DNA of 64,000 nt from Octopus sinensis (Eukaryota). Each line of letters begins with the position of its first letter. Positions within the stretch are counted from its first letter, which is position 1. The notes under the pieces are model-generated. The model saw only the letters and a list, made by a program, of their open reading frames with translations. It made no database searches and was not told where the DNA came from. Made by a program: the position numbers and the translations under genes. The stretch lies in assembly GCF_006345805.1 (NCBI RefSeq), contig NC_043011.1:25556464-25620463 (forward strand). The letters are read 5' to 3'. Positions 65-48,239 of the stretch are shown here, piece after piece.

Positions 65-880
65 GTAAGTCATAAATGAAATTTAGTTTTAGGAAAATGA
101 AAATTTCACATTTGAAAATGAGAATGAGTTATGTTTGGTAGTTTGTGTTATGAAATGGCATACTATGAAAAATATAATATTCATGTAATTGCTCTCAATG
201 ACAACTAAAATCTATGGAAGTAAAATCTAATTCAGTAACTAACAAGTGTTAGTTACTGAATTAAAAAAAAATGGAAGTTGAAAATAAAAGCAGCTTTCCT
301 ATTGCAAGGCCAAAAAATATTTTGATGGAAAATAGTTGTGGTCCTTGGTCCATAGGCAGGCTATTGATGTGCCTCTCCCAGGACTAGTTAGTTTTTAAAT
401 GTTTCTGTAACTTTGATTTTCTTCTAAGTAGGGATGTTGGCTCTATGCAAACCCATTTTACCCCTGGGAAGAAGTGATCCATATTAGTTTGGCCTTTATC
501 CTTTGATCTGACCTGCATGGGAGGCCCTACCTGGAACTGTAATTCAGAGTCACTGAGGTGCCCAGGCTACCATATTGCAACAAGAGCTTGACCTTCCATT
601 TGACTGGTTTCTTTACAATTCCCCTCTATCTGAATTTACCTGCAATACCTTGGTTAACTGGATCTCAGATGTTTTAGATATATGTCCATTAAGCGTAACA
701 TTAGGTTTTCTATAAGTCAGGACTGATATAAAGTTCACAAAAACATTGTATTATACAAAATCTGTTGGAAGACTTGTTTGTGTATCATTTATGTGTAATT
801 TTTGTATATATTAATATTTGAAATATTTCATATTAATAATTGAATGAATTTAATAATATTGTATTATTTTATATTCATAG

Positions 881-1093
881 AATCTTCAATACAAATTGAA
901 AGTTTACTGGAATATGATGAAAATATCACTATGGAAATAGCAGATATACAAGTATCAACACAAAATATTGGATCAAACTGCACAACAGACATTCATTGTT
1001 CCAGCAACAGTGTTTGTACTCAGAATTCTTGTGGCATATACTTGTGTACATGTCGTAAAGGTTTCTTTGAGATAGAAGGGCTTTGTAGAAAAG
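881..1093 (+). CDS. Gene 1 exon: acidic spacer plus Cys-rich EB/EGF-like module (IGSNCTTDIHCSSNSVCTQNSCGIYLCTCRKGFFEIEGLCRK)
   Basis: Acceptor ttcatag at 880, donor G|GTATGT at 1093/1094, 213 nt, phase 1-1. Cys spacing includes the C-x-C core of EB-like modules. Confidence 0.85.
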
Positions 1094-3204
1094 GTATGTA
1101 CATTAAGATATACATCTATCCTTGTTTATCATAGATGTTTGATTTAAAAGAAAACTGTGTTAAATGAATCAATGACAAATGAATAATAAAACAAATGAGA
1201 AAATTAGGTTTTGCTCCAAGATCCCAAGTTGCCCTAAGCTTGATGGATGGTCAGCAGGGTGTGCTTTTGTGGTTGAAGCAGAAATTTTGACTGGTTATTG
1301 ATCTGTGCTATCATGGTTCAATTTGTGACAAGCTTAATGCAGTTCACAATGAGTATGTCATGTTATCCCAGATCAGTGATGACTGAATTAATGTTAAACA
1401 AGGTTAGATTTATATCACTAAAAGATGAAATAATGAAACTATAGAAAATATATTTCATTTTTATTTCATCTAGTTTCAGCTCATGAGCTGTGGCCATGCT
1501 GGGGCACCGCCATTTAAATATGTGGCGGTTGTCCTGTAACATATCAGGATATTGGGCTGCAAGTGAAGGTTTGTTGTTGCTCTTTAGTTCTAGGTAATTT
1601 TTGATTGAGCAGAGCTATGATCAAATGCATTCAAATCATGACCACTCTATATTTTCTATTCAGCTATAGAGTATCTAAGGCTACACTCACTATACAAAGT
1701 GGTTGACTGGCAGAGCCATTAGAATGTTGGACAGAAAGTATTGTGACATTTATTCTGGCTCTCTGCCTTCTGAGTCCAAATTCTGCTGAGATCAAATGTG
1801 TTTTTCATCCTTTCAGGGTCAATATATAACATACTAGTCTAGTGCTGATGCAGTCCTTTCTCCTAGTTATCACATCCTGAATGTTCTGCACAATCAAAAG
1901 TGGGAGAGTTGTGATGGATTTTTGGATACTTGTAACATATATAGGTACCTAAAGCCTTTAGCAAAACATGGTACATGCCGATACCAAATCACCTATGATT
2001 GCAAGTGACGACCATAGTTTAGTTTTTCTTGCTATCCCATGTGTCCCTCCTTTTTTTTTTAATATATTAAGTTGTGATTTGATGTTTACTTGGCTACTGT
2101 ATCTAGCAAGTAAAGTAACTTCCTGAGTCAGTTTGTGAAAAACTTTTGTTTTCGTGTAATGTATTTAGGACAAATCAGCCTATAGGGGTCCATATCTATG
2201 TCAGGATTTGAACTCATTACAAGTGAATGAAACACAGTTCTCTTGCAACAACAAATGGCATGATATGAATTGTAGAAATACATGCACAGGAAAACTGAAG
2301 TATTTGCTCTGTTGAAAATAATTGGCCTTTCAGAACTACTAATGCAGTGAATTTATATGTTTATATACAGAATGTGAGTGTTTACATCTCATGTGACATT
2401 TTTACATATTGGTTAATTTCTAGGAAAAATTTATATCTACTATATAAACGAGAGTGTATGTGTGTATATCACAGAGAAGCTCCAAAACGGCACTTCCTTA
2501 AGAAAACGAATTTGATTTTCAAAATCTGTGTCCTAATGGGAAGATTTTTGATAATTAGTAAAAACAAAATTATTTGCTACAAGAAATAACTCAACTTTTA
2601 GATCACCAATTTACCTCTCTCTATCTGTCTATCAGGCTCTACCTGCCTATTATACTTTCCCCTCTCTATATATGTTTACCACACTCTTTATCACTCTCTG
2701 TAGATGTATATCTCTCATACATGCTGCTTCCCCACCTCTCTCTTGATATTACATGTAATGCAATATCAAGGGCTTCTGTCTATCTTTATGTAAATTATTT
2801 ACATGCCTGTTTGACCATTTCACATGACTTTATTCCTTAAAACTTATTAAAACTTCTAACAACTTTCGTTGTTGTAATGTTTTGCTTTCATTTTGTTAAA
2901 AACTTTATTGTCAATGTTTTTGCTTTCATTTTGTGATAGATGGCTATCATGCAGAAAATGCTAGCTTCCAAATCTTGTTTTTCTGATTGGGTAAAAATGA
3001 TCAAAATTTAAACTACTGTAGTATTTTACTAAAATTTTTCTGGAATAAAGTAATCACAAAATTAGATTCAGAGTAAAAAATTACATCAATATACTAAATT
3101 TGAACATTTTCATTTGATTTTAAAATTTAAAAATCTGCGACAGTAACAGAAATAAATCCCTCTTTCTGTGTGTCGCTCTCTGTCTTTTAAAATTTCCTCA
3201 TTGT

Positions 3205-3560: not shown

Positions 3561-3623
3561 ACTTATATTATCCATGTTTTAAATCTTTTTGTTTTCCTCT
3601 CATCTTACTTTTGTATTGATCAG

Positions 3624-3923
3624 TTGCTGGCATTGGAAGAGAGTGCAATAGCACAACAGTTTGCTACCCTTCCTCAACAGAATGTAAACCCAGACAGCGC
3701 TGTGGCTGCAAGTTCCCATTTGTGTTGAAAAATGGCTTTTGTGTGTTACCTGGAAAATCACTTGTAAATGAACAGTGCACCACTACTGCTGATTGTGCAG
3801 CTGAACAGCATCTGAAGTGTAAGGATGGCATATGTCAGTGCATGCCAGAATTTATTTTGGTTTCTGTTAAGGATTTCAGCCAGTTACCAGGAGAGATGTG
3901 CATTCCAGTCAACTCACATGCTG
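3624..3923 (+). CDS. Gene 1 exon: two 6-Cys EB-module-like repeats (AGIGRECNSTTVCYPSSTECKPRQRCGCKFPFVLKNGFC...QCTTTADCAAEQHLKCKDGICQCMPEF...MCIPVNSHA)
   Basis: Acceptor gatcag at 3623, donor G|GTGAGT at 3923/3924, 300 nt, phase 1-1, open frame that extends ORF 3722 upstream. Confidence 0.88.
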
Positions 3924-4050
3924 GTGAGTGTTGTTTCAACCCTTGTTCCTTTATTACTCTGTAGATATGATCATATCTTTACCGTTATCTGTATGATCCC
4001 ACAATAAACAACATAGCTTACTGTCATCAGTCAGTACAGCTCTAAACATA

Positions 4051-13283: not shown

Positions 13284-13457
13284 TTAATCAGCGCTCTTCT
13301 TCTGTGTAATTTGCTCTCTCTCAGCAACTGCTTTAGCTAGAGCATCAACCATTGGCTTGGGGTCGTAGCATGGTCCTTTGCCACCCAGATCAACAGGAAT
13401 CAGGGAAGGTTTGAAACACCGCCAGAAAGGTTCGAGATCATAGCCATATAAAAATAC
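13284..13457 (-). CDS. RLBP1: RLBP1-like last coding exon (VFLYGYDLEPFWRCFKPSLIPVDLGGKGPCYDPKPMVDALAKAVAEREQITQKKSAD*)
   Basis: Acceptor ttcacag, PxxxGG motif, TAA at 13286-13284. The five exons total 870 nt = 289 aa plus stop. Confidence 0.9.
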   Translation of the reverse strand, partial: VFLYGYDLEPFWRCFKPSLIPVDLGGKGPCYDPKPMVDALAKAVAEREQITQKKSAD

Positions 13458-14104
13458 CTGTGAAATAGATTAGGAAAGATTGTCAATATTCAGGTGTTGC
13501 TATCATATAAGGTGAGTCCTACATCTGTCATTGGGCCATTGTTATACCCTTAAGGTTTAATATTGTTCATATACTAGTTTTAGAGAAAGCGATCTTTTAG
13601 AGAGGATAAGTGGATAGATACACACACACACACACGCGCGCACACACACACATACACACACATGTGCGCATACACACATGCATACAACCACACACACACA
13701 CACGTATGCACACAGATGTATATGTGTGTATATGTATGTGTATGTATATGTTTGTATATATATGTATATAATTGGTGTGAGAGTCCAAATCTGACCACTT
13801 TGAACAATATTTTGGCTTGATATGACTGGTTTAAATGCTAAAGGGTTAACTACTCAGAAGAAACTTGGTAGCTTTTGAGTATTTAAAAGTGGTTCATATT
13901 CTCTTTGCAAAAAGTGGCCTTCACTTCAATGTAGACAAAATATTTGATATGTCAGAGGGGTCTGACATTAACAATGATACTCTGAATAGTGGAAATGATC
14001 CAATAAAACTCCACCTTTTTTAATACAAAACAGGAAAATTGGTGTAAAAACCCCATTATTTGAAAAAATAAGACATAAAAAGACACACTCAGAATAAATA
14101 ATGA

Positions 14105-14420
14105 AATTATTGTATACAGTGCTCAGGTGCACCACAACTTGTCAGAAAGTGCATATAAAGTATATGCAGTAATGTACGAATGTCTGGAAAGTGAACAATG
14201 TATGAGTCAGATACATGCTTGTGTGTGTATGGAGGGGAGAAAATCAGGTGTAGTGTTGGCGAATCTCAGAAAGCATGGAAGTTTTGAAGGATGCAGTGCT
14301 TCGACAACTAACAACTGATGCTGGCATTTTTTGTTCTATGCTTCAGCAACTCTCAGCGTGAAAAAATGTTTCCTAAAGTCATGGGAGCTGTGCTGTTTTC
14401 TGACTTTATAAATATGTCCA
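14105..14420 (-). mobile_element. 3' end of a CR1/jockey-type LINE
   Basis: Minus-strand FFTLRVAEA.NK..ASVVSCRSTASFKTSML. The terminus gcacctgagcactgtataca also occurs at about 5715 and 25125, next to (AAT)n. Confidence 0.75.
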
Positions 14421-15073
14421 CAGGTGTTAGACGGGTGGAGTTTGAAAAGGTGCTCAGAGTTATTGTTTGTAAGATGGTTAATAATTTTGAAGCATGGAGT
14501 GAACTACCCACATCAGCTGTTAGCTGCCAAGACACTACATCCTTCAAAACTTCTATGCTTCATGAAATTTGCCAATGCACCCCATGCCTTTTTTTTTGTT
14601 AAAGACTTATTTGCTGGTCATTTCCTCTGCATATTCTGTGCTGTTCCTGCAGTTTGGTTACTTTCACTGATGAGTCGTAGCATAGTACAATAAGTCCATT
14701 AATATTATTTTAAAGATAGTATAGGAAGGGACGTAATTCATGATGAAAGTGTTTGTTTTATCTCATACAAATTTAGTGTCTCATAAGAAAAATCTTTATA
14801 CAGAAGTAACTTCACAAAAATCTCTCTCGCTTTCATTTGACTCAGATAAACAGAATAGGGATAAAAAAGTATGTATGTTTGTGTGGCTGTATGTGTGATT
14901 ATGCATATGTATTCATATAGGCATGTGTGTGCCTGTGCAAGAGAGTGTATTTGTATGAGCACAGTGTGTGAGAGAGTATGCATTGTGTGTGTGTGCATGC
15001 ATGTGTGCGTGTGTGTGTGTGTGACAGTTTTCAATTTTCAAGGAATAAATTTGCACCCATGCCCCATGCTTAC

Positions 15074-15184
15074 CCTACTGGCTAGTTTTGTCTTCAGAAA
15101 GGGCCTTATAAGCCTGACGGTGTGAGTAAAGAACCAGGGCTGATAGATGAAGTGTGCTCCCTTAAACCTAGAAGGAAATGTCCC
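15074..15184 (-). CDS. RLBP1: RLBP1-like exon 4 ([37 protein letters not shown])
   Basis: Poly-T acceptor ttacag, donor AGG|GTAAGC, 111 nt, phase 0-0. FPxRFKxxHxxxQPW motif. Not in the ORF track; found by hand. Confidence 0.92.
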
Positions 15185-15971
15185 CTGTAAAAAAAAAAAA
15201 AAAAGTTAGCAAGGGCAGCATAAAAGCAGAAGTATATCACATGAACAGGTATGGAATCAAAGCATCACCACCATCACCATCACCATAACCATTACCAGTA
15301 ATATCATCGCAGCACAAAGCATAGAACCTTCTCAGTGATATATCAAATTGCTAGAAATAGCAGTCAGATTTTTCTAAAATAATTTCTAATTATCTTAAAG
15401 AAAGGAAAAAAGGCACTTTGGATAATGTCAATTTGGATACTCATAAAGAAAAAAAAAACTTGATGGTCATGAATGAAATGTCTCTGATCATAGGTCTGTT
15501 TGACAAGGGCTGACTAAGGGCTAAATAATGACTACAACAATATGAACAATAAAGCGTCCTCTTTTTCAGACTTCCTCCCCAACTAGAAACCCAGCTTCAG
15601 AAACATTTATTCAAAAGATCACCAACCAAGTCCCTCAACTTGCAAGAAATAACGACTAAATCTCCCTCAAATCATTCACTGATATAATTTTTATTTGGAA
15701 TGTTGGATCTTGAAGCAGACAAGCAGCTATAAATAACAGCATAATTTTTTTTAAAGACAGCAATGTGTGATTTGAGGAAAATTTGGATGCTATTTCTATT
15801 AGCTGAGTGACATTGTGGTGACTCATTTATCAAGTGGATAACCTATTTATTTGGATGGAGGTCCAAAATATCAGTAGTTTGAGATAAGTCGAATAATTTT
15901 TAGGTATTAGATAAGCTTTATCTATCTGTGTGAGAGAGCAAACGTCAAGCATTACCAGTGTGTCTACTTAC

Positions 15972-16193
15972 TTGTATGCTTTCGACCATTTTCTTCATGT
16001 CAGAGGGACGAGTTGTCAGTGCTTGTAGTAATGAGTAATCCCTGAAGTTCTCTACAATAGTTATGCCATTCAGTTGAGTTTCTTCATTCAGGAGTAGATA
16101 GTCCAAGAGAAAGAGATAAGACCTCAATACCACATCGTTAGGGAATTTGTTTCGATCCCAGTTCCCTATACTGAACAGCAGCACAATACATCC
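15972..16193 (-). CDS. RLBP1: RLBP1-like exon 3 (GCIVLLFSIGNWD...RSYLFLLDYLLLNEETQLNGITIVENFRDY...SDMKKMVESIQ)
   Basis: Acceptor aatttag, donor CAA|GTAAGT, 222 nt, phase 0-0. NEETQxNG..I.ENF resembles RLBP1 rather than clavesin or TTPA. Confidence 0.92.
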
Positions 16194-16229
16194 CTAAATT
16201 AAGAGAAGAAAAATGAGTGAGTTTACATG

Positions 16230-16273
<44 letters not shown>

Positions 16274-16861
16274 TTGTGTTTATCTGTATCTATAATAGGC
16301 AGGATGTGTGTGTATGTGTGTGTACATGAATGTAATTTGTGCACGTCCACAAATTAGCATGCATGTTGCTCCAATTTTAGGAGGACATTCATCATGATCC
16401 TAGTTGTATTTTCTTAAACTTATTTTTACCAGAGGCACCAATGAATAGCAGTAAAAATAAATTTTCAACCTAAACTTTTAACAATTTTCAAGTCAGAAAA
16501 ATCACCATTGTTTGCAAACAGGAGTTAAGTCCCCTTCTAGTGACAAGTTAGTTTTTGTTAAGACTTTTGTTGTTTTTTTCCATCAAGAAAAAAGTGCTTT
16601 GTAGATATACGGGCAACACACACACGAACATGTATATGTACAAAAAACATGTATGCAATAGGTGTATGTACGTACGTGTGTGTATGTGTGTGTTGCCCAT
16701 ATATATATATATATATATATAAACAAATTTCAACAGATTTTACCCAAATTTGACGTCGATGTTACTCCTCCTCACCTCTACCTCCACCTCTTTCTCCTTT
16801 TTATCTTCCACCACCACCACCACAACCACCACCTCAACAACAGCAGCTGCAGCAGCAACAA

Positions 16862-17150
16862 CAGACCGGGCGTTGTGTGTGTTTATTGAGTGAAAACACC
16901 TAAAGCTCCACGAAGCTCCAGCAGGGGGTGGGGTGGTGGCAACCCCTGTTGTACTCTTTCGCTCCAACTTTCTCTCACTCTTTCTTCCTGTTTCTTGTCC
17001 CCGACTTCCTACGCAACCGCTGAGCCTGGATGTGCATTCATCTATCCGTCGATGCTCTCGGTGTCGGGGGTTGACCTGCTTTCTCTTCTGCGGGTCTTAC
17101 GAATAGCAGAGGACCACGTTTCGGACTTCTAGGACGAAGACTGTTTTGCT
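16862..17150 (+). mobile_element. SINE body (family C), tRNA head missing
   Basis: 16862-16995 matches the reverse complement of 59335-59465, where a tRNA-like head is present. Confidence 0.7.
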
Positions 17151-17257
17151 CAACAAACAAACAAACAAAGCAGCAACAACAACTTGTGAAATCATTTGTC
17201 TTTGTTTCTAAGACTCTCTTGTTACTTAAATTCTGACAAAAAGTCGTAAATTCTCAC

Positions 17258-17373
17258 CTGTGCATCTCGTTCTGGTAAAATACCTGGAAAGCCATTTAAC
17301 AAACACTCTCGAACAGATTCAAATGTCAGGTCTTCTGAGACTTCAGGGTACTTTCTTTTAAATTTAACATGAC
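17258..17373 (-). CDS. RLBP1: RLBP1-like exon 2 (SHVKFKRKYPEVSEDLTFESVRECLLNGFPGILPERDAQ)
   Basis: Acceptor tttttag, donor CAG|GTGAGA, phase 1-0. Matches the CRALBP segment YVNFRLQYPE..G(Y/F)PG.L..RD as recalled. Confidence 0.9.
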
Positions 17374-17609
17374 CTAAAAAGGAAAAAGCTTGAATGATTA
17401 TTCTCCCCACAACCAGTTCATGACAGGTGTTAGCATGTTTATGTCCCCTGTAACTTAGCAGTTCAGCAAAAGAGACCTATAGAATAAGTACCATGCTTGA
17501 AAATAAGTCCTGGGGTCAATTTGCTTCAAGGTGATGCCCCATTATGGCCATTATCCAATGTCCAAAACAAGTAAAAGATCAAAGATAAAAGACATTAGGC
17601 AGGACATCT

Positions 17610-17790
17610 CTCTCACAAGCTAAAGAAGGCCTGGGACTCCAAATTGCCCAGGCAAATCAAACTCAAGCTGTTCATTGCAACTGTCGAATCAGTGCTGTTA
17701 TATGGCAGTGAAACATGGACACTGACATATTATCAAATGGGCTAAATGGCTGCAACACAAGGATGCTACAAATGGCCGTAAATGAGAAAT
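17610..17790 (+). mobile_element. RTE-type LINE ORF2 fragment
   Basis: Translates HKLKKAWDSKLPRQIKLKLFIATVESVLLYGSETWTLT. Confidence 0.75.
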
Positions 17791-17926
17791 GACAGCATCA
17801 CCACCACCACCACCACCACCACCACCACCATCACCACCACCGCCACTGCCACCGCCACCTCCACCGCCACCACCACTGCCGGCATAAAGATAAAGATGCA
17901 CACACACAAACACGTGTGCATGCACG

Positions 17927-17965
<39 letters not shown>

Positions 17966-18743
17966 ACACATGGTGGGTTTTCACACAGTTTCTGTCTATC
18001 AAATTCACACATAGAGCATTGGTTGGCATGGGGCTATAATAGAGGACACTTACCCAAGGTGCTGTGCTGTGCAGTGGGACTGAACCTGAAGCCACATGGC
18101 TGCAATAACAATCCTCTTGTCCCAATAAAAATACTAGTCTGATTATGTCAGTGGTTTCTCTTAAAATTGTTCAGTATTTTTAAAATTATTTTTTAATAGA
18201 ATTGTTGAGAGATGTTTAACATTTCTACTATTAAACTATGACTATAGTGAGATGCTTGAGTCAATAGTGTGCCAGCAAAAAAAAAAAAAAAAAAATAACA
18301 CAACAAAATATTTCCGTTATGCTTCAAGCTAAAATTGTGTCAAACCCAACTTTGCTTTTCAATAGATAAATACCAATCATTATTATAATAATTATTTGAA
18401 AATTACTGTTATTGATAATAAACATTGCCATGGGGACCTATATCTCTAGAGGAGGGAGTCTAGTCCACTGTATTAGTCACTTTTTGAAATGACTTAATCA
18501 AAAGAGGAAAGGCAACACACTTGTGAGTATTTTCAGAACCTTCAACACAAATTGGACAAAAGGATGAAGGAAGAATTTATCCCCAAACAGATCTCATCTA
18601 AATACTTGCAATTGAGTAGATTTTGCCTAAGTCACTCAAGAAACAGGTATTAAATGAAGTGTAATAAGGGAAAGACTCTTTATATATTGGAACATAATTT
18701 ATTTGTTACATAATTAGGAATGGTTTTCATGCAATATGATTAA

Positions 18744-18962
18744 CCCTTTCGTTACTGTATTTATTTTGAGATGCTCTGTGTTTCTTTCAATTACTTTAAA
18801 TACAACAAAGAATTTAGTAAGATAACTTAGTTATCATTAAGCTAGTGTTGGGGACATAAACTGTGACTAAGGTTTGGTGGAAGGTTTTATTAAAAATTTT
18901 TGAAAACAAGACTTTCGTACTCAGAGCCAGAGCTGGTTTCAGCCGGGTTGGTAGCGAAAGGG
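18744..18962. mobile_element. piggyBac-like MITE
   Basis: TTAA on both sides. TIRs ccctttcgttac / gtagcgaaaggg match 11/12. Confidence 0.85.
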
Positions 18963-19749
18963 TTAATGGGAACATTCAGATGAAACTGCAATATGATACA
19001 TACAGAAAGTGTTTGTTAGAAACTCAACATTTCAGCTAATTTTTACATTTGAAATACATATTCAGGTGTTGTGGTGTGTCTTCTTCAAAGATCATTCCAG
19101 GTTGAATATGTAGCTGTGAACACAGCTACCAGGAGAGTGTACACCAACTTGACTCAAGATACTCTGAATCTTTGGCACTCAGTTTGGCTGTATTTGTAGG
19201 CTTTGCTCATGGAAAGTTCTAGTCAGACCACCAAAATTATTACCTGAACAATGGCTGTTCATTGGATAAAATGTCAGTTGTGCACATGATTAAACTGTGA
19301 TTTCTATCTGGCAAAATGTGGGATCGAATTCAATGCTATAGAAGTAATGGATTAAGTCTAACATCTAAGAAAAGTAATACTTCCTCTGGGTGGGCTAATA
19401 CACACAGTTCTTGTCCTTTAAGTTTCACTCATTAGGCTTCAGTTTCCCCTAAGACTATAGTAGAAGACATTTGTCTCTGGTGTCATGCAATGAGATCGAG
19501 TCCAGAATCATGTAGTTGGAAAGCAAATTTCTTGCAGTGTAAAGGACAAAAATGTCTCTTGCCTTGCCTTGGCAAACAACTCCAAAAAGGAATTCAACTG
19601 CCTGACTAGAATTTACTGTATGGCTCATAGACATTCTCTCTCCTATTGGCCAGTAGACAGAATACCCAAGGACACCCTCCCCCATACTTGCACATTTGTT
19701 CTCACTGACTTCTCTTGCAAAAGAGAGCACACTTAAATCACCTGTTTCA

Positions 19750-19762
19750 TCACGTGACGTCA
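19750..19762. promoter_or_regulatory. Overlapping palindromic E-box (TCACGTGA) and CRE (TGACGTCA), with a CCAAT box at 19645-19649
   Basis: tcacgtgacgtca in an otherwise CpG-poor intron of the RLBP1-like gene. Function is inferred, not shown. Confidence 0.4.
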
Positions 19763-19990
19763 TTTCCCCTCTCACTTCCAGTGCATCATCCCTATGCTAC
19801 ACTTCTAAACCACACAGCTATGCTTGTGCCTGTTCATGTGCATGTGTGTGTGTGTGAGCTTATTTTGTTAACTCAGGAATAATCAAAAACGAAAGAGATC
19901 TGAACTCAAAATGCAGAGGAAAAGCATTAAACAGTTTATCTAGTATTTTACATTTTCAATCACTTTACTTCCTTTGAAACAATGATTATA

Positions 19991-20331
19991 TTGCAGTGTG
20001 GAAGGTGTTTATAAGTTATTTAAGAAACACACAAAAAACCATTAGATTCACTTCAACATTTAAATTTAATTTGCCAAAATATTTTTGTCGCTTTGAGACT
20101 GCGACCTGTTCACTGACAAAATTCCGTGCTGCATGGAATTTTGTCAATGAACAGGTCGCGGTCTCAAAGTGACGAAAATATTTTGACAAGTTAAATTTAA
20201 ATGTTGAAGTGAATCTAACAGTTTTTTTGTGTGTTTCTTAAATGGCTTATAAACACCTTCCACACTGCAATTGTTTTCGTTCCAGCACACGATCTCAGAT
20301 CAGGTCACTTGCTATGCAAGTACATCTCCGT
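19991..20331. mobile_element. Fold-back non-autonomous element (Penelope pLTR-like) with a hammerhead-like motif in each arm and a TSD
   Basis: About 280-bp palindrome centred near 20130, plus a 60-bp unique tail. aatgattatattg at 19981-19993 and 20333-20345. Second copy at 34279. Confidence 0.85.
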
Positions 20332-20359
20332 AAATGATTATATTGATTTTTTTTTTTAC

Positions 20360-20800
20360 TGCAGAGGAGTGTGTTTACTTGATTAAATCACTCAGTTCAT
20401 GACTGATATTTATTAGCTGGGGGAGTGGGTACATTTGATTAAATCATTCCAATATATAATTTATAGAAGGAATGTGCATATTTGATTAAATTACCCAAAA
20501 CACAACTGATATTTATTAGTTGAGGGAGTGGGTATATTTGATGAGATCACCCCAGTGTATGATTTGTGGATATAATGTTTATATTTCATTAAATCATCCA
20601 ATACATGACTCATATTTATTAGTTGAGGGAATGGATATACTTAATGAAATCATTCCACTTTATGATTGATACTTATTTGCTGGAGGAGTCGATACACATG
20701 TTTAAACTGCCCTAGTATATGATTAAAACTTATTTGTTGGGGGAGTGTGTATACTTGATTAAATAATCTCAGCACATGAGTGACATTTACTTGATGAACA
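20360..20800. repeat. Degenerate 50-57 bp minisatellite, about 8 units
   Basis: Recurring ggg(g)agtgggtata.ttgattaaatca...actgatatttattagtt. Confidence 0.75.
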
Positions 20801-20928
20801 ATGGGAAGGAGAAAAACTCAAACCAAGCATAGCACAATTTGAATTCAGATTGTAAATAGACAGAAATATGAATGCTATTTCTAACATTCTGCAGTATTAG
20901 ACCGGAGTGACATTTTAAAATATCTTAC

Positions 20929-21175
20929 TTTTGATCAGCTCAAATGTTCTTTCAACATCAAACTTTTTAGACCTGAGAAATTTGAGGAGGTGGTCATCAT
21001 CTTCAGTTGGAAAACATGCCTCTATATTGTTGTCAGATTTAATTAGTTCTCGTATTTGTGTTAAACATTCATCTCGTTTGTCTTTAGTTTCATTTAATTC
21101 TGTTTGGGCTCGAGTTTGAAATTCTTCTGGAAGTGAGGGAAGTTTGCGGAAAATTTGGTCATAGAAGGATTCCAT
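20929..21175 (-). CDS. RLBP1: RLBP1/CRALBP-like CRAL-TRIO protein, coding exon 1 (CRAL-TRIO N domain: MESFYDQ...RAQTELNET...LLKFLRSKKFDVERTFELIK)
   Basis: ATG at 21175, 1 nt after acceptor tttcag (so a 5' UTR exon lies upstream). Donor A|GTAAGA at 20929/20928, phase 1. FLRxKKFDVE motif. Confidence 0.9.
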
Positions 21176-31919: not shown

Positions 31920-33142
31920 ATGCTCTGAGACCAACTTCTGTCACTTTCCAGGGAGAAAAACTAGAAATAGTTGATAGCTTCCGTTACCTAGGTGACCAAG
32001 TCAGCAGCGGGGGCAGGTGTACTGAAAGTAAGAATAGCTTGGGCAAAGTTCAGAGAGCTCTTACCTCTGCTGGTGACAAAAGGCCTCTCACTCAGAGTAA
32101 AAGGCAGACTGTATGACGCGTGTGTACGAACAGCCATGCTACATGGCAGTGAAACATGGGCCGTGACTGCTGAGGATATGCGTAAGCTCGCAAGAAATGA
32201 AGCCAGTATGCTCCGATGGATGAGTAATGTCAGTATTTATACTCGACAGAGTGTAAGTACCTTGAGAGAAAAGCTGGACCTAAGAAGCATCAGATGTGGT
32301 GTGCAAGAGAGACGTTTGTGCTGGTATGGACATGTGGCGAGAATGGATGAAGATAGTTGTGTGAAAAAGTGCCACACCCTAGCGGTTGAGGGAACCTGTG
32401 GAAGAGGCAGACCCAGGAAAACCTGGGACGAGGTGGTGAAGCACGACCTTCGAACTTTAGGTCTCACTGAAGAAATGACTAGAGACCGGGACCTCTGGAA
32501 GTATGCTGTGCGTGAGAAGACCAGGCAGGACAAGTGAGACCATAACCCATGGCCTTCTACATGGGATGTAGCCAGCCCACTTATGCATACCTTCCCTTCT
32601 TGGGACACAAAACTCTACTTGTGAAGACCTGTTGAGGCAAGTGAGAACCAGGATCGAAATCGATCAATGGAAATTGCAGCTGAGTTACAAGTGCTGGTGG
32701 CACGTAAGAGAACCATCCGAACGTGGCCGTTGCCAGCGCCACACCGACTGGCCTCGTACCGGTGGCATGTAAAAAGCACCATCTGTTCGTAGCCGTTGCC
32801 AGCACCGCCCCGACTGGCCTCGTGCCAGTGGCACGTAAAAAGCACCATCCGTTCGTGGCCGTTGCCAGCGCCGCCCCGACTGGCCTCGTGCCGGTGGCAC
32901 GTAAAAAGCACTATCCGATCGTGGCCGTTGCCAGCCTCGTCTGGCACCTGTGCCGGTGGCACGTAAAAAGCACCCACTACACTCATGGAGTGGTTGGCGT
33001 TAGGAAGGGCATCCAGCCGTAGAAACATTGCCAGATCAAACTGGGCCTGGTGCAGCCTTCTGGCTTCCCAGACCCCAGTTGAACCGTCCAACCCATGCTA
33101 GCATAGAAAGCGGACGCTAAACGATGATGATGATGATGATGA

Positions 33143-43974: not shown

Positions 43975-44875
43975 ACCACCGCCCACCACCCTGATCACCA
44001 CCCACCATACTGACCACCGCCCACCACCTCATCACTGCCCACCACCCTGACCACCGCCCACCACCTCATCACTGCCCACCATCTCACCACTGCCCACCAC
44101 CCTCACCACAACCCTCACTACCGCCAACCACCATCACCGCCGCCCACCACCTCACCACCGCCCACCACCTCACCACCGCCCACCACCTCACCACCGCCCA
44201 CCACCTCACCACCGCCCACCACCTCACCACCGCCCACCACCTCACCACCGCCCACCACCTCACCACCGCCCACCACCTCACCACTGCCCACCACCCTCAC
44301 CACAACCCTCACTACCGCCAACCACCATCACCACCGCCCACCACCTCACCACCGCCCACCACCTCACCACCGCCCACCACCTCACCACCGCCCACCACCT
44401 CACCACCGCCCACCACCTCACCACCGCCCACCACCTCACCACCGCCCACCACCTCACCACTGCCCACCACCTCACCACCGCCCACCACCTCACCACCGCC
44501 CACCACATCACCACTGCCCACCACCTCACCACCGCCCACCACCTCACCACCGCCCACCACCTCACCACCGCCCACCACCTCACCACCGCCCACCACCTCA
44601 CCACCACCTCACCACTGCCACCACCTCACCACCGCCCACCACATCACCACCGCCCACCACATCACCACCGCCCACCACCTCACCACCGCCCACCACCTCA
44701 CCACCGCCCACCACCTCACCACTGCCCACCACCTCACCACCGCCCACCACCTCACCACCGCCCACCACATCACCACCGCCCACCACCTCACCACCGCCCA
44801 CCACCTCACCACTGCCCACCACCTCACCACCGCCCACCACATCACCACCGCCCACCACCTCACCACTGCCCACCA
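43975..44875. repeat. 18-bp GC-rich minisatellite (accgcccaccacctcacc)n, about 50 units
   Basis: Highly homogeneous units. It explains the VVRWWA/GGGEVV ORFs. Confidence 0.95.
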
Positions 44876-44958
44876 CCGCCACCGCCTCCGCTGCTGCCAC
44901 TGCTGCTCCTTCATACCTATAAACTGTGAGTTGAGATGGTAGTTCAATGCTGTAACCC

Positions 44959-45215
44959 CAGTGATTCTCAATCAGGTTCCATATGGCCCTTGGGGGTCCA
45001 TATAAGATTTTGTTGTTAAAATTTGTCTGCGATAAATTGCTTATACACAAAATAATTTAACAATTTTTTAAAATGCAATTCCTAATAATATTTAATTATG
45101 AAAATATTTTATAGCATTTTATTAAACAATGAATGGCTAGTAGGTGGGGGGGTTCCATCTGTGTAAAATAGGAACCAAAGGGATCCATAGGTAAAAGAAT
45201 GGCTGAGAAACACTG
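44959..45215. mobile_element. hAT-like MITE
   Basis: Ends cagtgattctca / tgagaaacactg. TSD is only 5/8. Same family as 60021-60875. Confidence 0.7.
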
Positions 45216-45428
45216 TTTTGCCCTGTGACAAACAAGCAAGTGAATGACGATGTTAGTGTGATTATTCAACTGGCTAGAAACAGTAGCCAAATTTCCTTCT
45301 AAATCCACACCCTCCCACCTTAAGGATACATCAGGAAATGTGACCCACTGTTTTGCCCTAACCACACAGCCATCCTCATTAACCAGCATCACATGTCATA
45401 AAACACCTAACTCTCTCACCTCTTTCAG

Positions 45429-45543
45429 CCAGTTGACCTTCTCTATACACCTCCCACTGACCAAGATCATCAGATTTGCCATCTTCTATATCCTGGTACA
45501 CTCTGTAGCAGACTTCACAACGAACAAGAGGACCTGAGACATC
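45429..45543 (+). CDS. CCDC177: CCDC177-like exon 2 (PVDLLYTPPTDQDHQICHLLYPGTLCSRLHNEQEDLRH)
   Basis: Acceptor ctctttcag, donor C|GTAAGT. The phase-0 start continues the VK|PV(D/E)LL motif. Confidence 0.85.
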
Positions 45544-45549
45544 GTAAGT

Positions 45550-45750
45550 AATCCTTTCTACTAAAGGCACAAGGCATGAAATTTTTTGGGGGTGGATTAG
45601 TCGATTGCATCAACCCCAGTGTTTCACTAGAACTTAATTTATCGACCCTGAAAGGATGAAATGTAAAGTTGACCTTGGTGGAATTTGAACTCAGAATGCC
45701 ACTAAGCATTTTGCCTGGCGTGCTAATGATTCTGCCAGCTTGCTGTCTTA
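45550..45750 (-). mobile_element. SINE family A copy abutting the donor of CCDC177-like exon 2
   Basis: SINE tail begins within about 6-10 nt of the GTAAGT at 45544. Confidence 0.8.
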
Positions 45751-45944
45751 GACAATGTAAATAATGACACAACATAAGCAACAACATGAGCAGCAGTAGT
45801 AGCAGCAGTAGCAGCAGCAACAACTACAACTATGGCAACAGCAGTAGTAATAGCAGCTGCATAAGCAACTGCAGAGACAACAGTAAAAACAAAGGCAACA
45901 ATAGTTGCAATTACAACAATAGCTGTAGCAATAGGAACAACAAG

Positions 45945-46280
45945 AATATTGGCAATAGCAACAATAGCAACAACAGTAGCAGTGGTAACAACAAGAGTAG
46001 CAATAGTAACAATAAGAATGTTGGCAATAGTAACAACAAGAGTAGCAATAGTAACAATAAGAATGTTGGCAATAGTAACAACAAGAGTAGCAATAGTAAC
46101 TATAAGAATGTTGGCAATAGTAACAACAAGAGTAGCAATAGTAACAACAAGAATATTGGCAATAGTAACAACAAGAGTAGCAATAGTAACAACAAGAATA
46201 TTGGCAATAGTAACAACAACAGTAGCAATAGTAGCAACAAGAATATTGGCAATAGTAACAACAACAGTAGCAAGAGTAAC
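45945..46280. repeat. 45-bp minisatellite (aatagtaacaacaagagtagcaatagtaacaataagaatgttggc), about 7 units
   Basis: Built from AAC/AGC/AAT triplets. Gives the 15-aa periodic NSNNKSSNSNNKNVG ORF. Confidence 0.9.
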
Positions 46281-47454
46281 AAGCTGTAGAAACTGTAATA
46301 TCAGTAACCTTAGCAACTGGAACATTTGCAATAGTAATGGCAGTAATAAAATAATGAATGCACCCTTTTAAAGCCTGGCCAGGCTCATGGGCTTGGTTTC
46401 TATGGCGTATGTGTTCCCCAGCTGGATGGGACGCCAGTCCATTGCAGCGTTACTCATTTTTGCCAGCTGAGTGGACTGGAGCAACATGAAATGAAGTGTT
46501 TTGCTCATGGACAAAATGCGTCGCTCAGTCCAGGAATCGAAACCACAATCTTACCATCATGATACTGACACCCTAACCACTAAGCCATGCACCTCCACAG
46601 TAATGGCAGTAGTATACTAAAAACAAAATAAGCAATAGCAACAGCATTATCAATGGTAACAACATTAGCAATGGTGATGACAACAGTAACAATAGTAGCA
46701 ATAGTAACAACAACAACAGTAGTCATGGTAGCATCAACACACTCTACATGTTAACTCTGCTAAAACACACATTCAAAGGGACCTGGTAAACAGTTATGTC
46801 CGAGGGCCCTTAATACTCTCAGTCTGCCTCTGATCACAGCTGTAGCAATAGTAACTTTAACAATGATAGCAACTGCATCATTAGCAATAGTAACAGCAGC
46901 AACAACTGTAACAATAGTAACAACAACAATAGCAAGAGTAACAACAACAATGGCAATAGTAATGACAATATTAGTAGGAGTAACACCATCACCATCACCA
47001 CCACCAACAGCAACAACAACAACAGCAGTAGCAACAGCTTTTCCAATGGTAACAACATTAGTAATGACAATAATCATTGTAATATTAGCAACAGCAATAA
47101 TAGTAATAATAGCAAGAACAATAACAATAGCAACAACAACAGTAGCAATAATAACAAAGCCAACAATAACTGCATTAGCAATATTGGTTTCAAATTTTGG
47201 TGCAAGGCCAGCAATTTCGGTGTTGCGGGGTAAGTGGATTACCTTAACCCCAGCGCTCAACTGGTACTTATTTTATCGACCCTCAAAGGGATGGAAAGGT
47301 AAAATCGACCTTGGCACAATTTGAACTCAGAATGTAAGGACAAGCGAAGTGCCATTAAGCACTTCGCCTGGCTTGCTAACGACTCTGCCAGCTTGCCATC
47401 TTAACTGCATTAGCAACATAAACAACAGTCTTAACAAGAACAACAACAATAGTG

Positions 47455-47556
47455 ATAACAACAATGACTACTACTACTACTACTACTACAACTACTACTA
47501 CTACTACTACTACTGCTGCTGCTACTGCCGCTGCCACTGCCACCACCACCACCACC

Positions 47557-47604
<48 letters not shown>

Positions 47605-47699
47605 GCTGCTGCTGCTGATGCCACTGCCGCCGCCACCACTAGCACTAGCACCACCACCAATACCACCACCACCAGCACCACCACCAGCACCACCACCTT

Positions 47700-47744
<45 letters not shown>

Positions 47745-47763
47745 CACCACCACCACCACCACC

Positions 47764-47809
<46 letters not shown>

Positions 47810-47840
47810 TTACTACTACTACTACTATCACTACTACTAC
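47455..47840. repeat. Compound (ACT)n/(ACC)n/(GCT)n microsatellite
   Basis: Direct reading. Confidence 0.95.
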
Positions 47841-48239
47841 AGTAGCCATAAAATATTTTGTGAAAGCAATCCCTGGAACCAATGGTTTGAGCAACCATTG
47901 GTTCCCAGGATATTAACCATAATTATGCCATAAATTGCCTTTCATTGCCAGCATCATCATCACCACAGCAGACATCAATGTTTGCAGCTGCTGCTGATGC
48001 TGCTGTTGTCGATGCTGCTGATGTTTGCTGCTCTTAAAGGCTGGTGCTACTGTTTCTATTGCTGCTGTTAAAAGACCCTGCTGCCGTTGCTGCTGCTGTT
48101 AAAAGGTTGTTGCTCTCTGGTGTCTCTGCTACTGCTGCTGCTCCTGCTGCTGATCTTGCATATTTTATGTTCCTCCTGCTTTATTTTTTCTTTCTTACTA
48201 GTTTCAACTAGTGGGCTGTGGCCATGCTGGAGTGTATCA

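What the first reader, a model, noticed from the sequence alone, without database searches (positions are those of the whole stretch)
13284..21175. Complete CRALBP (RLBP1)-type retinoid carrier in a probable cephalopod
The 289-aa protein follows vertebrate RLBP1 motif by motif as recalled. Tyr (RSY) and Glu (VENF) are 22 residues apart, exactly like human Y180 and E202, which contact the retinal carbonyl. The FPxRFK Arg and QPW Trp are kept, while the M226-equivalent is Ser. Cephalopod chromophore recycling is normally described through retinochrome and the SEC14-like RALBP. A CRALBP-type protein suggests an additional 11-cis-retinoid handling route in eye, skin or glia-like cells (inference).
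Basis: partly seen in the sequence, partly recalled or inferred. Interest (0 to 1): 0.7.

Follow-up and report, generated by a model that had tools for sequence, protein, structure and literature searches.

The report
Octopus RLBP1 (CRALBP) gene, already known
This is the intact Octopus sinensis copy of RLBP1/CRALBP, the carrier that handles 11-cis-retinoids in vertebrate eyes.

Summary
Five minus-strand exons with GT-AG introns (21175-13284) encode a 289-aa CRAL-TRIO protein.

It is 100% identical to RefSeq XP_029645822 'retinaldehyde-binding protein 1-like [Octopus sinensis]'. It belongs with RLBP1, not clavesin or TTPA, on these grounds:
- Human CRALBP scores 237 bits against 110 for TTPA.
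- A chordate-only RLBP1 HMM scores 311 bits, against 223 (clavesin) and 220 (TTPA-like).
- It falls in the RLBP1 clade of a 151-taxon NJ tree.
- It shares a phase-1 intron with Xenopus RLBP1 that the sampled clavesin and TTPA genes lack.
- The AF2 model's best fold match is CRALBP 3HY5 (TM 0.85).

Y180, E202, R234, W166 and W245 equivalents are kept. Six of ten mutagenesis-defined sites are kept. dN/dS against O. bimaculoides is 0.17.

Vöcking, Leclère & Hausen (2021) already reported RLBP1 orthologues in every cephalopod genome they checked, with the same 6/10 count, and proposed the same extra retinoid route. The finding is therefore correct but already known. Ligand binding and expression in cephalopods remain untested.

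The parts
20929..21175 (-). Coding exon 1 (aa 1-82 plus the first base of codon 83). ATG at 21175-21173. An AG acceptor lies directly upstream, so an untranslated 5' exon is possible. Encodes the N-terminal helical region (CRAL_TRIO_N).
   Evidence: donor gtaaga, phase 1
17258..17373 (-). Coding exon 2 (aa 83-121). Preceded by the phase-1 intron that is shared with Xenopus RLBP1.
15972..16193 (-). Coding exon 3 (aa 122-195). Holds W133 (= W166), Y147 (= Y180), E169 (= E202), Q178, M190, V191 and S193 (= M226).
15074..15184 (-). Coding exon 4 (aa 196-232). Holds FPSRFK with R201 (= R234) and QPW with W212 (= W245).
13284..13457 (-). Coding exon 5 (aa 233-289 plus the TAA stop at 13286-13284).

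Best explanation
This is the single-copy Octopus sinensis orthologue of vertebrate RLBP1 (CRALBP). It is a soluble Sec14/CRAL-TRIO lipid carrier whose closed hydrophobic pocket most likely sequesters a cis-retinoid (11-cis-retinal or 11-cis-retinol).

Shown here:
- An intact five-exon gene under purifying selection.
- Membership of the RLBP1 clade.
- A CRALBP-like predicted fold.
- Retention of the Tyr/Glu pair that contacts the retinal carbonyl in human CRALBP, and of the Arg mutated in Bothnia dystrophy. The roles of these residues are from my knowledge of He et al. 2009 PNAS, which I could not re-read here.

Inferred, not shown: that it binds 11-cis-retinoids and shuttles or protects them in photoreceptive tissue alongside the retinochrome/RALBP system. 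This rests on the chiton orthologue, which is expressed only in photoreceptor cells (Vöcking et al. 2021).
For: Gene model:
- 289-aa ORF with GT-AG at all four introns.

Identity:
- 100% identical to XP_029645822.1 'retinaldehyde-binding protein 1-like [Octopus sinensis]'.
- 96% identical to O. bimaculoides RLBP1.

Family assignment:
- phmmer against PDB: CRALBP 236.7 bits, TTPA 110, SEC14L2 about 40.
- In the scan of 1.84 billion representatives, the hits at 38% identity or more whose names I looked up are all RLBP1 or RLBP1-like, except four unnamed entries (a frog 'unnamed protein product', a Ciona savignyi CRAL-TRIO protein and two environmental sequences). None is a clavesin or TTPA.
- NJ tree of 151 CRAL-TRIO proteins: the query sits with chiton, Sepia, Argonauta, Haliotis, tunicate and vertebrate RLBP1. 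The named clavesins and TTPA form separate clades.
- The exact 20-taxon RLBP1 clade appears in 121 of 200 bootstraps. A clade of at most 40 taxa holding mollusc and vertebrate RLBP1 with no clavesin or TTPA appears in 199 of 200.
- HMM scores: chordate RLBP1 (no molluscs in the model) 310.7 bits, clavesin 223.4, TTPA-like 219.6.
- The phase-1 intron in codon 83 is shared with Xenopus RLBP1 and is absent from a fish clavesin and a fish TTPA gene.

Structure and residues:
- AF2 model pLDDT 93.2. Best PDB fold match is 3hy5 CRALBP with TM 0.85-0.86, against TTPA at about 0.72.
- Kept: W166, Y180, E202, Q211, M223, V224, R234, W245, R151.

Selection:
- dN/dS = 0.17 against O. bimaculoides.

Published:
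- ML and Bayesian trees reach the same conclusion, and chiton RLBP1 is expressed in photoreceptor cells.
Against: - Four of the ten mutagenesis-defined CRALBP residues differ: F198I, C199T, M209L, M226S. M226S puts a small polar residue at a position where M226K causes human disease (the disease link is from my own knowledge). Affinity or isomer preference could therefore differ.
- The held literature has no expression or binding data for any cephalopod RLBP1.
- NJ support for the exact RLBP1 clade is only 60%, because cnidarian and sponge RLBP1-like sequences move in and out of it.
- My tree did not include squid RALBP or Drosophila PINTA.
Confidence: 0.88

Rival explanations
1. It is an RLBP1 orthologue by descent, but in cephalopods it has drifted to another hydrophobic ligand (tocopherol-like, a phosphoinositide, or another lipid) or to a non-visual role. 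On this reading it adds no retinoid route.
For: - Only 6 of 10 critical residues are kept, and three adjacent pocket positions are changed: F198I, C199T, M226S.
- Cnidarian RLBP1-like proteins keep only 3 of 10 and are doubted as retinoid binders.
- Cephalopods already have RALBP for retinal shuttling.
- No cephalopod expression data were found.
Against: - The carbonyl-contacting Tyr/Glu pair, R234, W166 and W245 are all kept in Octopus, Argonauta and Sepia.
- The gene is under strong purifying selection.
- The closest studied orthologue, from a chiton, is expressed only in photoreceptor cells.
- The predicted fold matches CRALBP better than TTPA.
Confidence: 0.2
2. It is really a clavesin or TTPA-like paralogue that automated annotation has mislabelled as RLBP1-like.
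For: Many invertebrate CRAL-TRIO proteins carry loose 'RLBP1-like' or 'clavesin' names. Mosquito and sponge entries are examples.
Against: - It scores 87 bits more on the chordate RLBP1 HMM than on the clavesin HMM.
- Named clavesins (fish, starfish, mantis shrimp) and TTPA form separate clades. They are excluded from the RLBP1 clade in 199 of 200 bootstraps.
- It shares an intron with Xenopus RLBP1 that the sampled clavesin and TTPA genes lack.
- Published ML and Bayesian trees agree.
Confidence: 0.03
3. It is a non-functional or mispredicted gene: a pseudogene, or a chance chain of ORFs.
For: None was found. The only gap is that I had no RNA evidence to check.
Against: - The ORF is intact and all four introns are canonical.
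- Argonauta and Haliotis have the same exon structure.
- dN/dS is 0.17.
- The AF2 model has pLDDT 93.
Confidence: 0.01

Closest known systems
Human CRALBP / RLBP1 (PDB 3HY5, 4CIZ)
   Same: - About 40% identity over the whole length.
- Same Sec14/CRAL-TRIO fold (TM 0.85).
- Equivalents of Y180, E202, R234, R151, W166, Q211, M223, V224 and W245 are kept.
- Three of the four octopus intron positions and phases match Xenopus RLBP1.
   Different: - 289 aa against 317 aa. It lacks the roughly 30-residue N-terminal extension and about 8 residues of a helix-loop insert near residues 48-55.
- F198I, C199T, M209L and M226S.
- One intron lies at a different site.
- Ligand binding and tissue are untested.
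Leptochiton asellus RLBP1 (Las-RLBP1, Vöcking et al. 2021), with the O. bimaculoides, Sepia pharaonis and Argonauta hians RLBP1 entries
   Same: - Same molluscan RLBP1 clade (170 of 200 bootstraps).
- O. bimaculoides is 96% identical, Argonauta 75%, the Sepia cluster 57% and the chiton 46%.
- The 6/10 residue count I obtained equals the published count for O. bimaculoides.
   Different: The chiton keeps 8/10 residues (including F198 and M226) and has in situ evidence of expression in photoreceptor cells. No cephalopod has such data.
Clavesins (CLVS1/2)
   Same: CRAL-TRIO fold, about 30% identity, and two shared phase-0 introns.
   Different: - Separate clade, and 87 bits lower on the HMM test.
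- The sampled fish clavesin has no intron at the codon-83 position.
- The sampled fish clavesin carries a C-terminal extension that this protein does not have.
Alpha-tocopherol transfer protein (TTPA)
   Same: CRAL-TRIO fold (TM about 0.72) and two shared phase-0 introns.
   Different: 110 bits against 237 bits for CRALBP, a separate clade, and different positions for the first two introns.
Squid RALBP and Drosophila PINTA
   Same: Both are CRAL-TRIO-domain retinoid carriers used in invertebrate eyes. They are the likely functional analogues.
   Different: Published trees place RALBP in a different group with mollusc and annelid members. PINTA is described as insect-lineage and non-orthologous (PMC5739039 abstract). 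I did not include either sequence in my tree.

Membership tests
RLBP1 / CRALBP | Sec14-type CRAL-TRIO domain with an N-terminal helical domain | tested here: met
   Pfam CRAL_TRIO E = 2.8e-24; CRAL_TRIO_N scores 21.6 bits, just under its 23-bit cut-off. AF2 model pLDDT 93.2, and the best PDB fold match is CRALBP 3hy5 with TM 0.85.
RLBP1 / CRALBP | Groups with chordate RLBP1 to the exclusion of clavesin and TTPA | tested here: met
   NJ tree of 151 proteins. Bootstraps: 121/200 for the exact clade and 199/200 for a clade free of clavesin and TTPA. HMM scores 310.7 against 223.4 and 219.6 bits. Published ML and Bayesian trees agree.
RLBP1 / CRALBP | Residues that contact the retinal carbonyl (Y180, E202), plus R234, R151, W166 and W245 | tested here: met
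   Y147, E169, R201, R118, W133 and W212 align to them. The roles of Y180 and E202 come from my recollection of He et al. 2009, which is not held in the library.
RLBP1 / CRALBP | The full set of ten mutagenesis-defined ligand residues (W166, Y180, F198, C199, M209, Q211, M223, V224, M226, W245) | tested here: inconclusive
   6 of 10 are kept. The changes are F198I, C199T, M209L and M226S. The paper reports the same count for O. bimaculoides.
RLBP1 / CRALBP | Gene structure shared with vertebrate RLBP1 | tested here: met
   The phase-1 intron at codon 83 equals Xenopus codon 116. It is absent from the sampled clavesin and TTPA genes. Two further phase-0 introns are shared by the whole family.
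RLBP1 / CRALBP | High-affinity, stereoselective binding of 11-cis-retinal and 11-cis-retinol | not testable with these tools
   This needs recombinant protein and retinoid titration.
RLBP1 / CRALBP | Expression in photoreceptive or chromophore-recycling cells | not testable with these tools
   No expression data tool is available. No cephalopod RLBP1 expression study was found. The chiton orthologue is specific to photoreceptor cells.
Clavesin (CLVS1/2) | Groups with named clavesins and scores best on a clavesin profile | tested here: not met
   The clavesin clade (fish, starfish, mantis shrimp and relatives) is separate. The clavesin HMM scores 87 bits lower than the RLBP1 HMM.
TTPA / TTPAL | Groups with named TTPA and scores best on a TTPA profile | tested here: not met
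   Fish TTPA and amphioxus TTPA-like proteins form a distant clade. TTPA scores 110 bits against 237 bits for CRALBP on PDB sequences. The TTPA-like HMM scores 219.6 bits.
Cephalopod RALBP (SEC14-like) | Groups with Todarodes RALBP | not tested
   No RALBP sequence was fetched. The published tree puts RALBP in a different, well-supported group. SEC14L2/3/4 score only 30-41 bits against the query.

The most novel reading that the evidence does not exclude
Cephalopod RLBP1 is a true 11-cis-retinoid chaperone that runs a light-independent ('dark') branch of chromophore supply. It could, for example, serve xenopsin or non-retinal opsins in skin, in parallel with retinochrome/RALBP. The altered F198I/C199T/M226S pocket would then give it an isomer or alcohol/aldehyde preference different from vertebrate CRALBP. 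The idea was already floated for chiton by Vöcking et al. 2021. Only a demonstration in cephalopods would be new.
Probability: 0.3. Interest if true: 0.55.

Novelty: already known. Interest (0 to 1): 0.2.

Why it matters
RLBP1 in cephalopods means that one component of the vertebrate visual cycle predates vertebrates. It also means the textbook two-protein retinochrome/RALBP scheme for cephalopod chromophore recycling is incomplete. That point has been in the literature since 2021. What is still open is the ligand, the cell type and the physiological role in cephalopods, and these can be tested directly with this gene.

This re-analysis adds three small items:
- An intron shared between mollusc and Xenopus RLBP1 and missing from the sampled clavesin and TTPA genes, which is independent support for orthology.
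- An RLBP1-clade gene in the vetigastropod Haliotis asinina, although the 2021 survey found none in three other gastropods.
- A convergent EB-domain neighbour gene conserved between Octopus and Argonauta.

Tried and rejected
- A second CRAL-TRIO copy or tandem paralogue in the window: none. tblastn finds only the five exons.
- The 'two O. bimaculoides sequences' in the paper: the RefSeq entries are isoforms that differ in the last exon. The alternative last exon has no match in this window.
- The first word-indexed homologue search returned only 9 hits and no clavesins. The profile search added vertebrate and Ciona RLBP1 but still no vertebrate clavesin. I therefore used the full HMMER scan of representatives.
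- P0028, which I first took for a fish clavesin, is a mis-modelled fish RLBP1.
- High-identity partial hits (P0071, P0073, P0092, P0119, P0144) are fragmentary vertebrate RLBP1 models or an unnamed frog protein, not new invertebrate orthologues.
- I tried to re-read the CRALBP crystal-structure paper for the Y180/E202 contacts. It is not held, and two text searches for those residues with CRALBP found nothing. A third search, for 'E202' with 'retinaldehyde', matched only reference identifiers.
- dN/dS against Argonauta is unusable because dS is saturated, so I used O. bimaculoides instead.
- The Rfam scan of the window found nothing.
Full report
**Observation**

The region lies in AT-rich, microsatellite-laden eukaryotic DNA. 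Open segments on the minus strand join through four canonical GT-AG introns into five coding exons: 21175-20929, 17373-17258, 16193-15972, 15184-15074 and 13457-13284. Together they give an 870-nt CDS of 289 aa ending in TAA. tblastn of the protein against the whole window finds only these five exons, so the window holds no second copy.

**Identity of the sequence**

The protein is 100% identical over all 289 residues to RefSeq XP_029645822.1/XP_029645823.1, 'retinaldehyde-binding protein 1-like [Octopus sinensis]' (UniProt A0A6P7T4X9). Its 90% cluster also holds O. bimaculoides 'retinaldehyde-binding protein 1 isoform X1', which is 96% identical, and an isoform X2 with a different last exon. 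The locus is O. sinensis GCA_006345805.1, CM016873.1, at about 25.56-25.59 Mb. 'Probable cephalopod' is therefore correct.

**Which CRAL-TRIO family it belongs to**

Pfam finds CRAL_TRIO at E = 2.8e-24, with CRAL_TRIO_N just under its cut-off. Scores against PDB sequences are:

| PDB protein | Bits |
|---|---|
| Human CRALBP | 236.7 (E = 2.8e-69) |
| TTPA | about 110 |
| SEC14L2 / yeast Sec14 | about 40 |

No clavesin has a solved structure, so I ran a full HMMER scan of 1.84 billion representatives. I named key hits by cluster look-up.

- The best hits are Haliotis asinina RLBP1-like (253 bits), a teleost rlbp1b, and Ciona savignyi, Ciona intestinalis and Phallusia RLBP1.
- Scores then fall to 185 bits or less, into sponge 'RLBP1-like' proteins and generic CRAL-TRIO proteins.
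- Among the hits at 38% identity or more that I looked up, all are RLBP1 or RLBP1-like except four unnamed entries (a frog protein, a Ciona savignyi CRAL-TRIO protein and two environmental sequences). None is a clavesin or TTPA.

I then built a neighbour-joining tree of 151 near-full-length proteins over 273 columns with Kimura distances.

- The query falls in a 20-member clade with Argonauta, the Sepia pharaonis cluster, Leptochiton RLBP1, Haliotis, three tunicates and twelve vertebrate RLBP1 sequences.
- A Hydractinia RLBP1-like protein is sister to that clade.
- The named clavesins (teleost clavesin-1, starfish and mantis-shrimp clavesin-2-like) form their own clade. So do TTPA and the amphioxus TTPA-like protein.

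Bootstrap support over 200 replicates:

| Grouping | Replicates |
|---|---|
| Cephalopods | 199 |
| Molluscs | 170 |
| Exact 20-taxon RLBP1 clade | 121 |
| Clade of at most 40 taxa with mollusc and vertebrate RLBP1, no clavesin or TTPA | 199 |

A tree-independent HMM test gives the same answer:

| Profile | Bits for the query |
|---|---|
| Chordate RLBP1 only (no molluscs in the model) | 310.7 |
| Sponge/cnidarian-like group | 259.0 |
| Clavesin | 223.4 |
| TTPA-like | 219.6 |

**Gene structure**

I mapped exact exon junctions in six genes.

- Octopus, Argonauta and Haliotis share all four intron positions and phases.
- The phase-1 intron inside codon 83 matches Xenopus laevis RLBP1 codon 116. 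A fish clavesin-1-like gene has no intron at that position. A fish TTPA gene has a phase-0 intron three alignment columns away.
- Two phase-0 introns are common to all six genes, so they are a family-level character.
- The remaining intron sits at a different place in each lineage.

This is modest but independent support for orthology with RLBP1.

**Residues**

Numbering follows 4CIZ, which reproduces the published residue names. The changes are F198→I165, C199→T166, M209→L176 and M226→S193. The residues kept are:

| Human residue | Octopus residue |
|---|---|
| R151 | R118 |
| W166 | W133 |
| Y180 | Y147 |
| E202 | E169 |
| Q211 | Q178 |
| M223 | M190 |
| V224 | V191 |
| R234 | R201 |
| W245 | W212 |

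Six of the ten residues listed by Vöcking et al. are kept, which equals their count for O. bimaculoides. That Y180 and E202 contact the retinal carbonyl is from my knowledge of He et al. 2009. The paper is not held in the library and I could not re-read it.

**Fold**

An AlphaFold2 model built from a 23-sequence alignment has mean pLDDT 93.2 and pTM 0.90. Foldseek ranks CRALBP 3hy5 first (TM 0.85/0.86, rmsd 2.5 Å). TTPA follows at about 0.72 and Sec14 at about 0.55.

**Is the gene live?**

The ORF is intact and all splice sites are canonical. Against O. bimaculoides, dS = 0.103, dN = 0.018 and dN/dS = 0.17. Against Argonauta, dS is saturated but pN/pS is about 0.22. The gene is under purifying selection.

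**What is already known**

Vöcking, Leclère & Hausen (BMC Ecol Evol 2021, PMC8628405) report the following:

- RLBP1 orthologues in chitons, a phoronid and every cephalopod genome they examined: Euprymna scolopes, Hapalochlaena maculosa, Callistoctopus minor, O. bimaculoides, O. vulgaris and Sepia pharaonis.
- ML and Bayesian trees against clavesins.
- The ten-residue comparison.
- In situ evidence that the chiton orthologue is expressed only in photoreceptor cells, together with r-opsin, retinochrome and RALBP.
- An explicit proposal that molluscan chromophore recycling is more complex than retinochrome plus RALBP, and may include a dark cycle.

A 2022 review repeats this. Full-text searches found no cephalopod-specific expression or binding study.

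**Mechanism**

- *Shown:* an intact, conserved RLBP1 orthologue with a CRALBP-like fold and the key polar pocket residues.
- *Inferred:* it encloses a cis-retinoid in the Sec14-type pocket and buffers or shuttles it in photoreceptive tissue. I put this at about 0.6-0.7, given the orthology.
- *Main rival:* it has diverged to another lipid or a non-visual role (about 0.2). The F198I, C199T and M226S changes and the lack of expression data keep this open.
- *Effectively excluded:* a mislabelled clavesin or TTPA, and a pseudogene.

**Verdict**

The gene is already annotated and the biological point is already published, so novelty is 'already known' and interest is low. What I add is small: the shared intron, the Haliotis RLBP1-clade gene, and the conserved neighbouring gene.

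Noticed in passing
window 844-1131 and 3620-3961 (+). The gene call ends near window 10699.: These are EB-module (PF01683) cysteine-rich exons of a roughly 1095-aa gene that converges on the 3' end of the RLBP1 gene. An EB gene sits in the same convergent position next to RLBP1 in Argonauta hians. A 1112-aa gene with no Pfam entry on record sits there in O. bimaculoides. The local gene order is therefore conserved across octopods.
   Followed up: partly
L006 1-27892 (covers window about 3284-31175), strand opposite to RLBP1: The O. sinensis annotation has a 623-aa DUF4659 gene spanning the whole 27.9-kb locus. RLBP1 and the EB gene would then lie inside its intron. No such gene is listed at the O. 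bimaculoides locus, so this may be an annotation artefact.
   Followed up: no
L002 (Haliotis asinina CM074538.1), protein P0065 = XP_067653407.1: This vetigastropod has an RLBP1-clade gene. It is the best hit to the octopus protein (253 bits), shares the same four intron positions, and scores 299 bits on the RLBP1 HMM against 238 on the clavesin HMM. The 2021 survey found no RLBP1 in three other gastropods. It carries Phe at the Y180 position and a roughly 165-aa low-complexity N-terminal extension.
   Followed up: partly
window 19990-20271 (intron 1): A foldback of about 280 bp. The inner arms are 20033-20129 and 20131-20227 (97 nt, 91% complementary, 1 nt apart). They are flanked by outer arms of 49 nt at 96% complementarity. 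It looks like a MITE or hairpin element.
   Followed up: partly
window 20365-20770 (intron 1): A tandem array with a 103-bp period, containing a 57-bp sub-repeat. Copies are 72-80% identical.
   Followed up: partly
window 31992-32534 (+): A 181-aa open frame (…LYDACVRTAMLHGSETWAV…RRLCWYGHVARMDEDS…). From memory it resembles the C-terminal tail of a LINE ORF2. It has no Pfam hit. It is probably a decayed retrotransposon fragment.
   Followed up: partly
window about 43995-47900: A long block of strand-biased low-complexity tandem repeats. The six-frame reading gives TTAHHL / PPPTTS repeats, GC reaches 0.53 and GC skew reaches -0.51. The open frames of up to 315 aa are almost certainly repeat artefacts, not genes.
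   Followed up: no
P0230 (O. bimaculoides isoform X2) against the window: The alternative last exon of O. bimaculoides RLBP1 isoform X2 (273 aa) has no detectable counterpart anywhere in this O. sinensis window.
   Followed up: partly
P0070, P0078, P0074, P0005, P0022 (sponge sequences): Sponges (Sycon, Oscarella, Ephydatia) have CRAL-TRIO proteins that are labelled RLBP1-like or score close to RLBP1. In the NJ tree they fall just outside the RLBP1 clade. The Ephydatia protein lacks the Y180 and E202 equivalents (Leu and Ala).
   Followed up: partly
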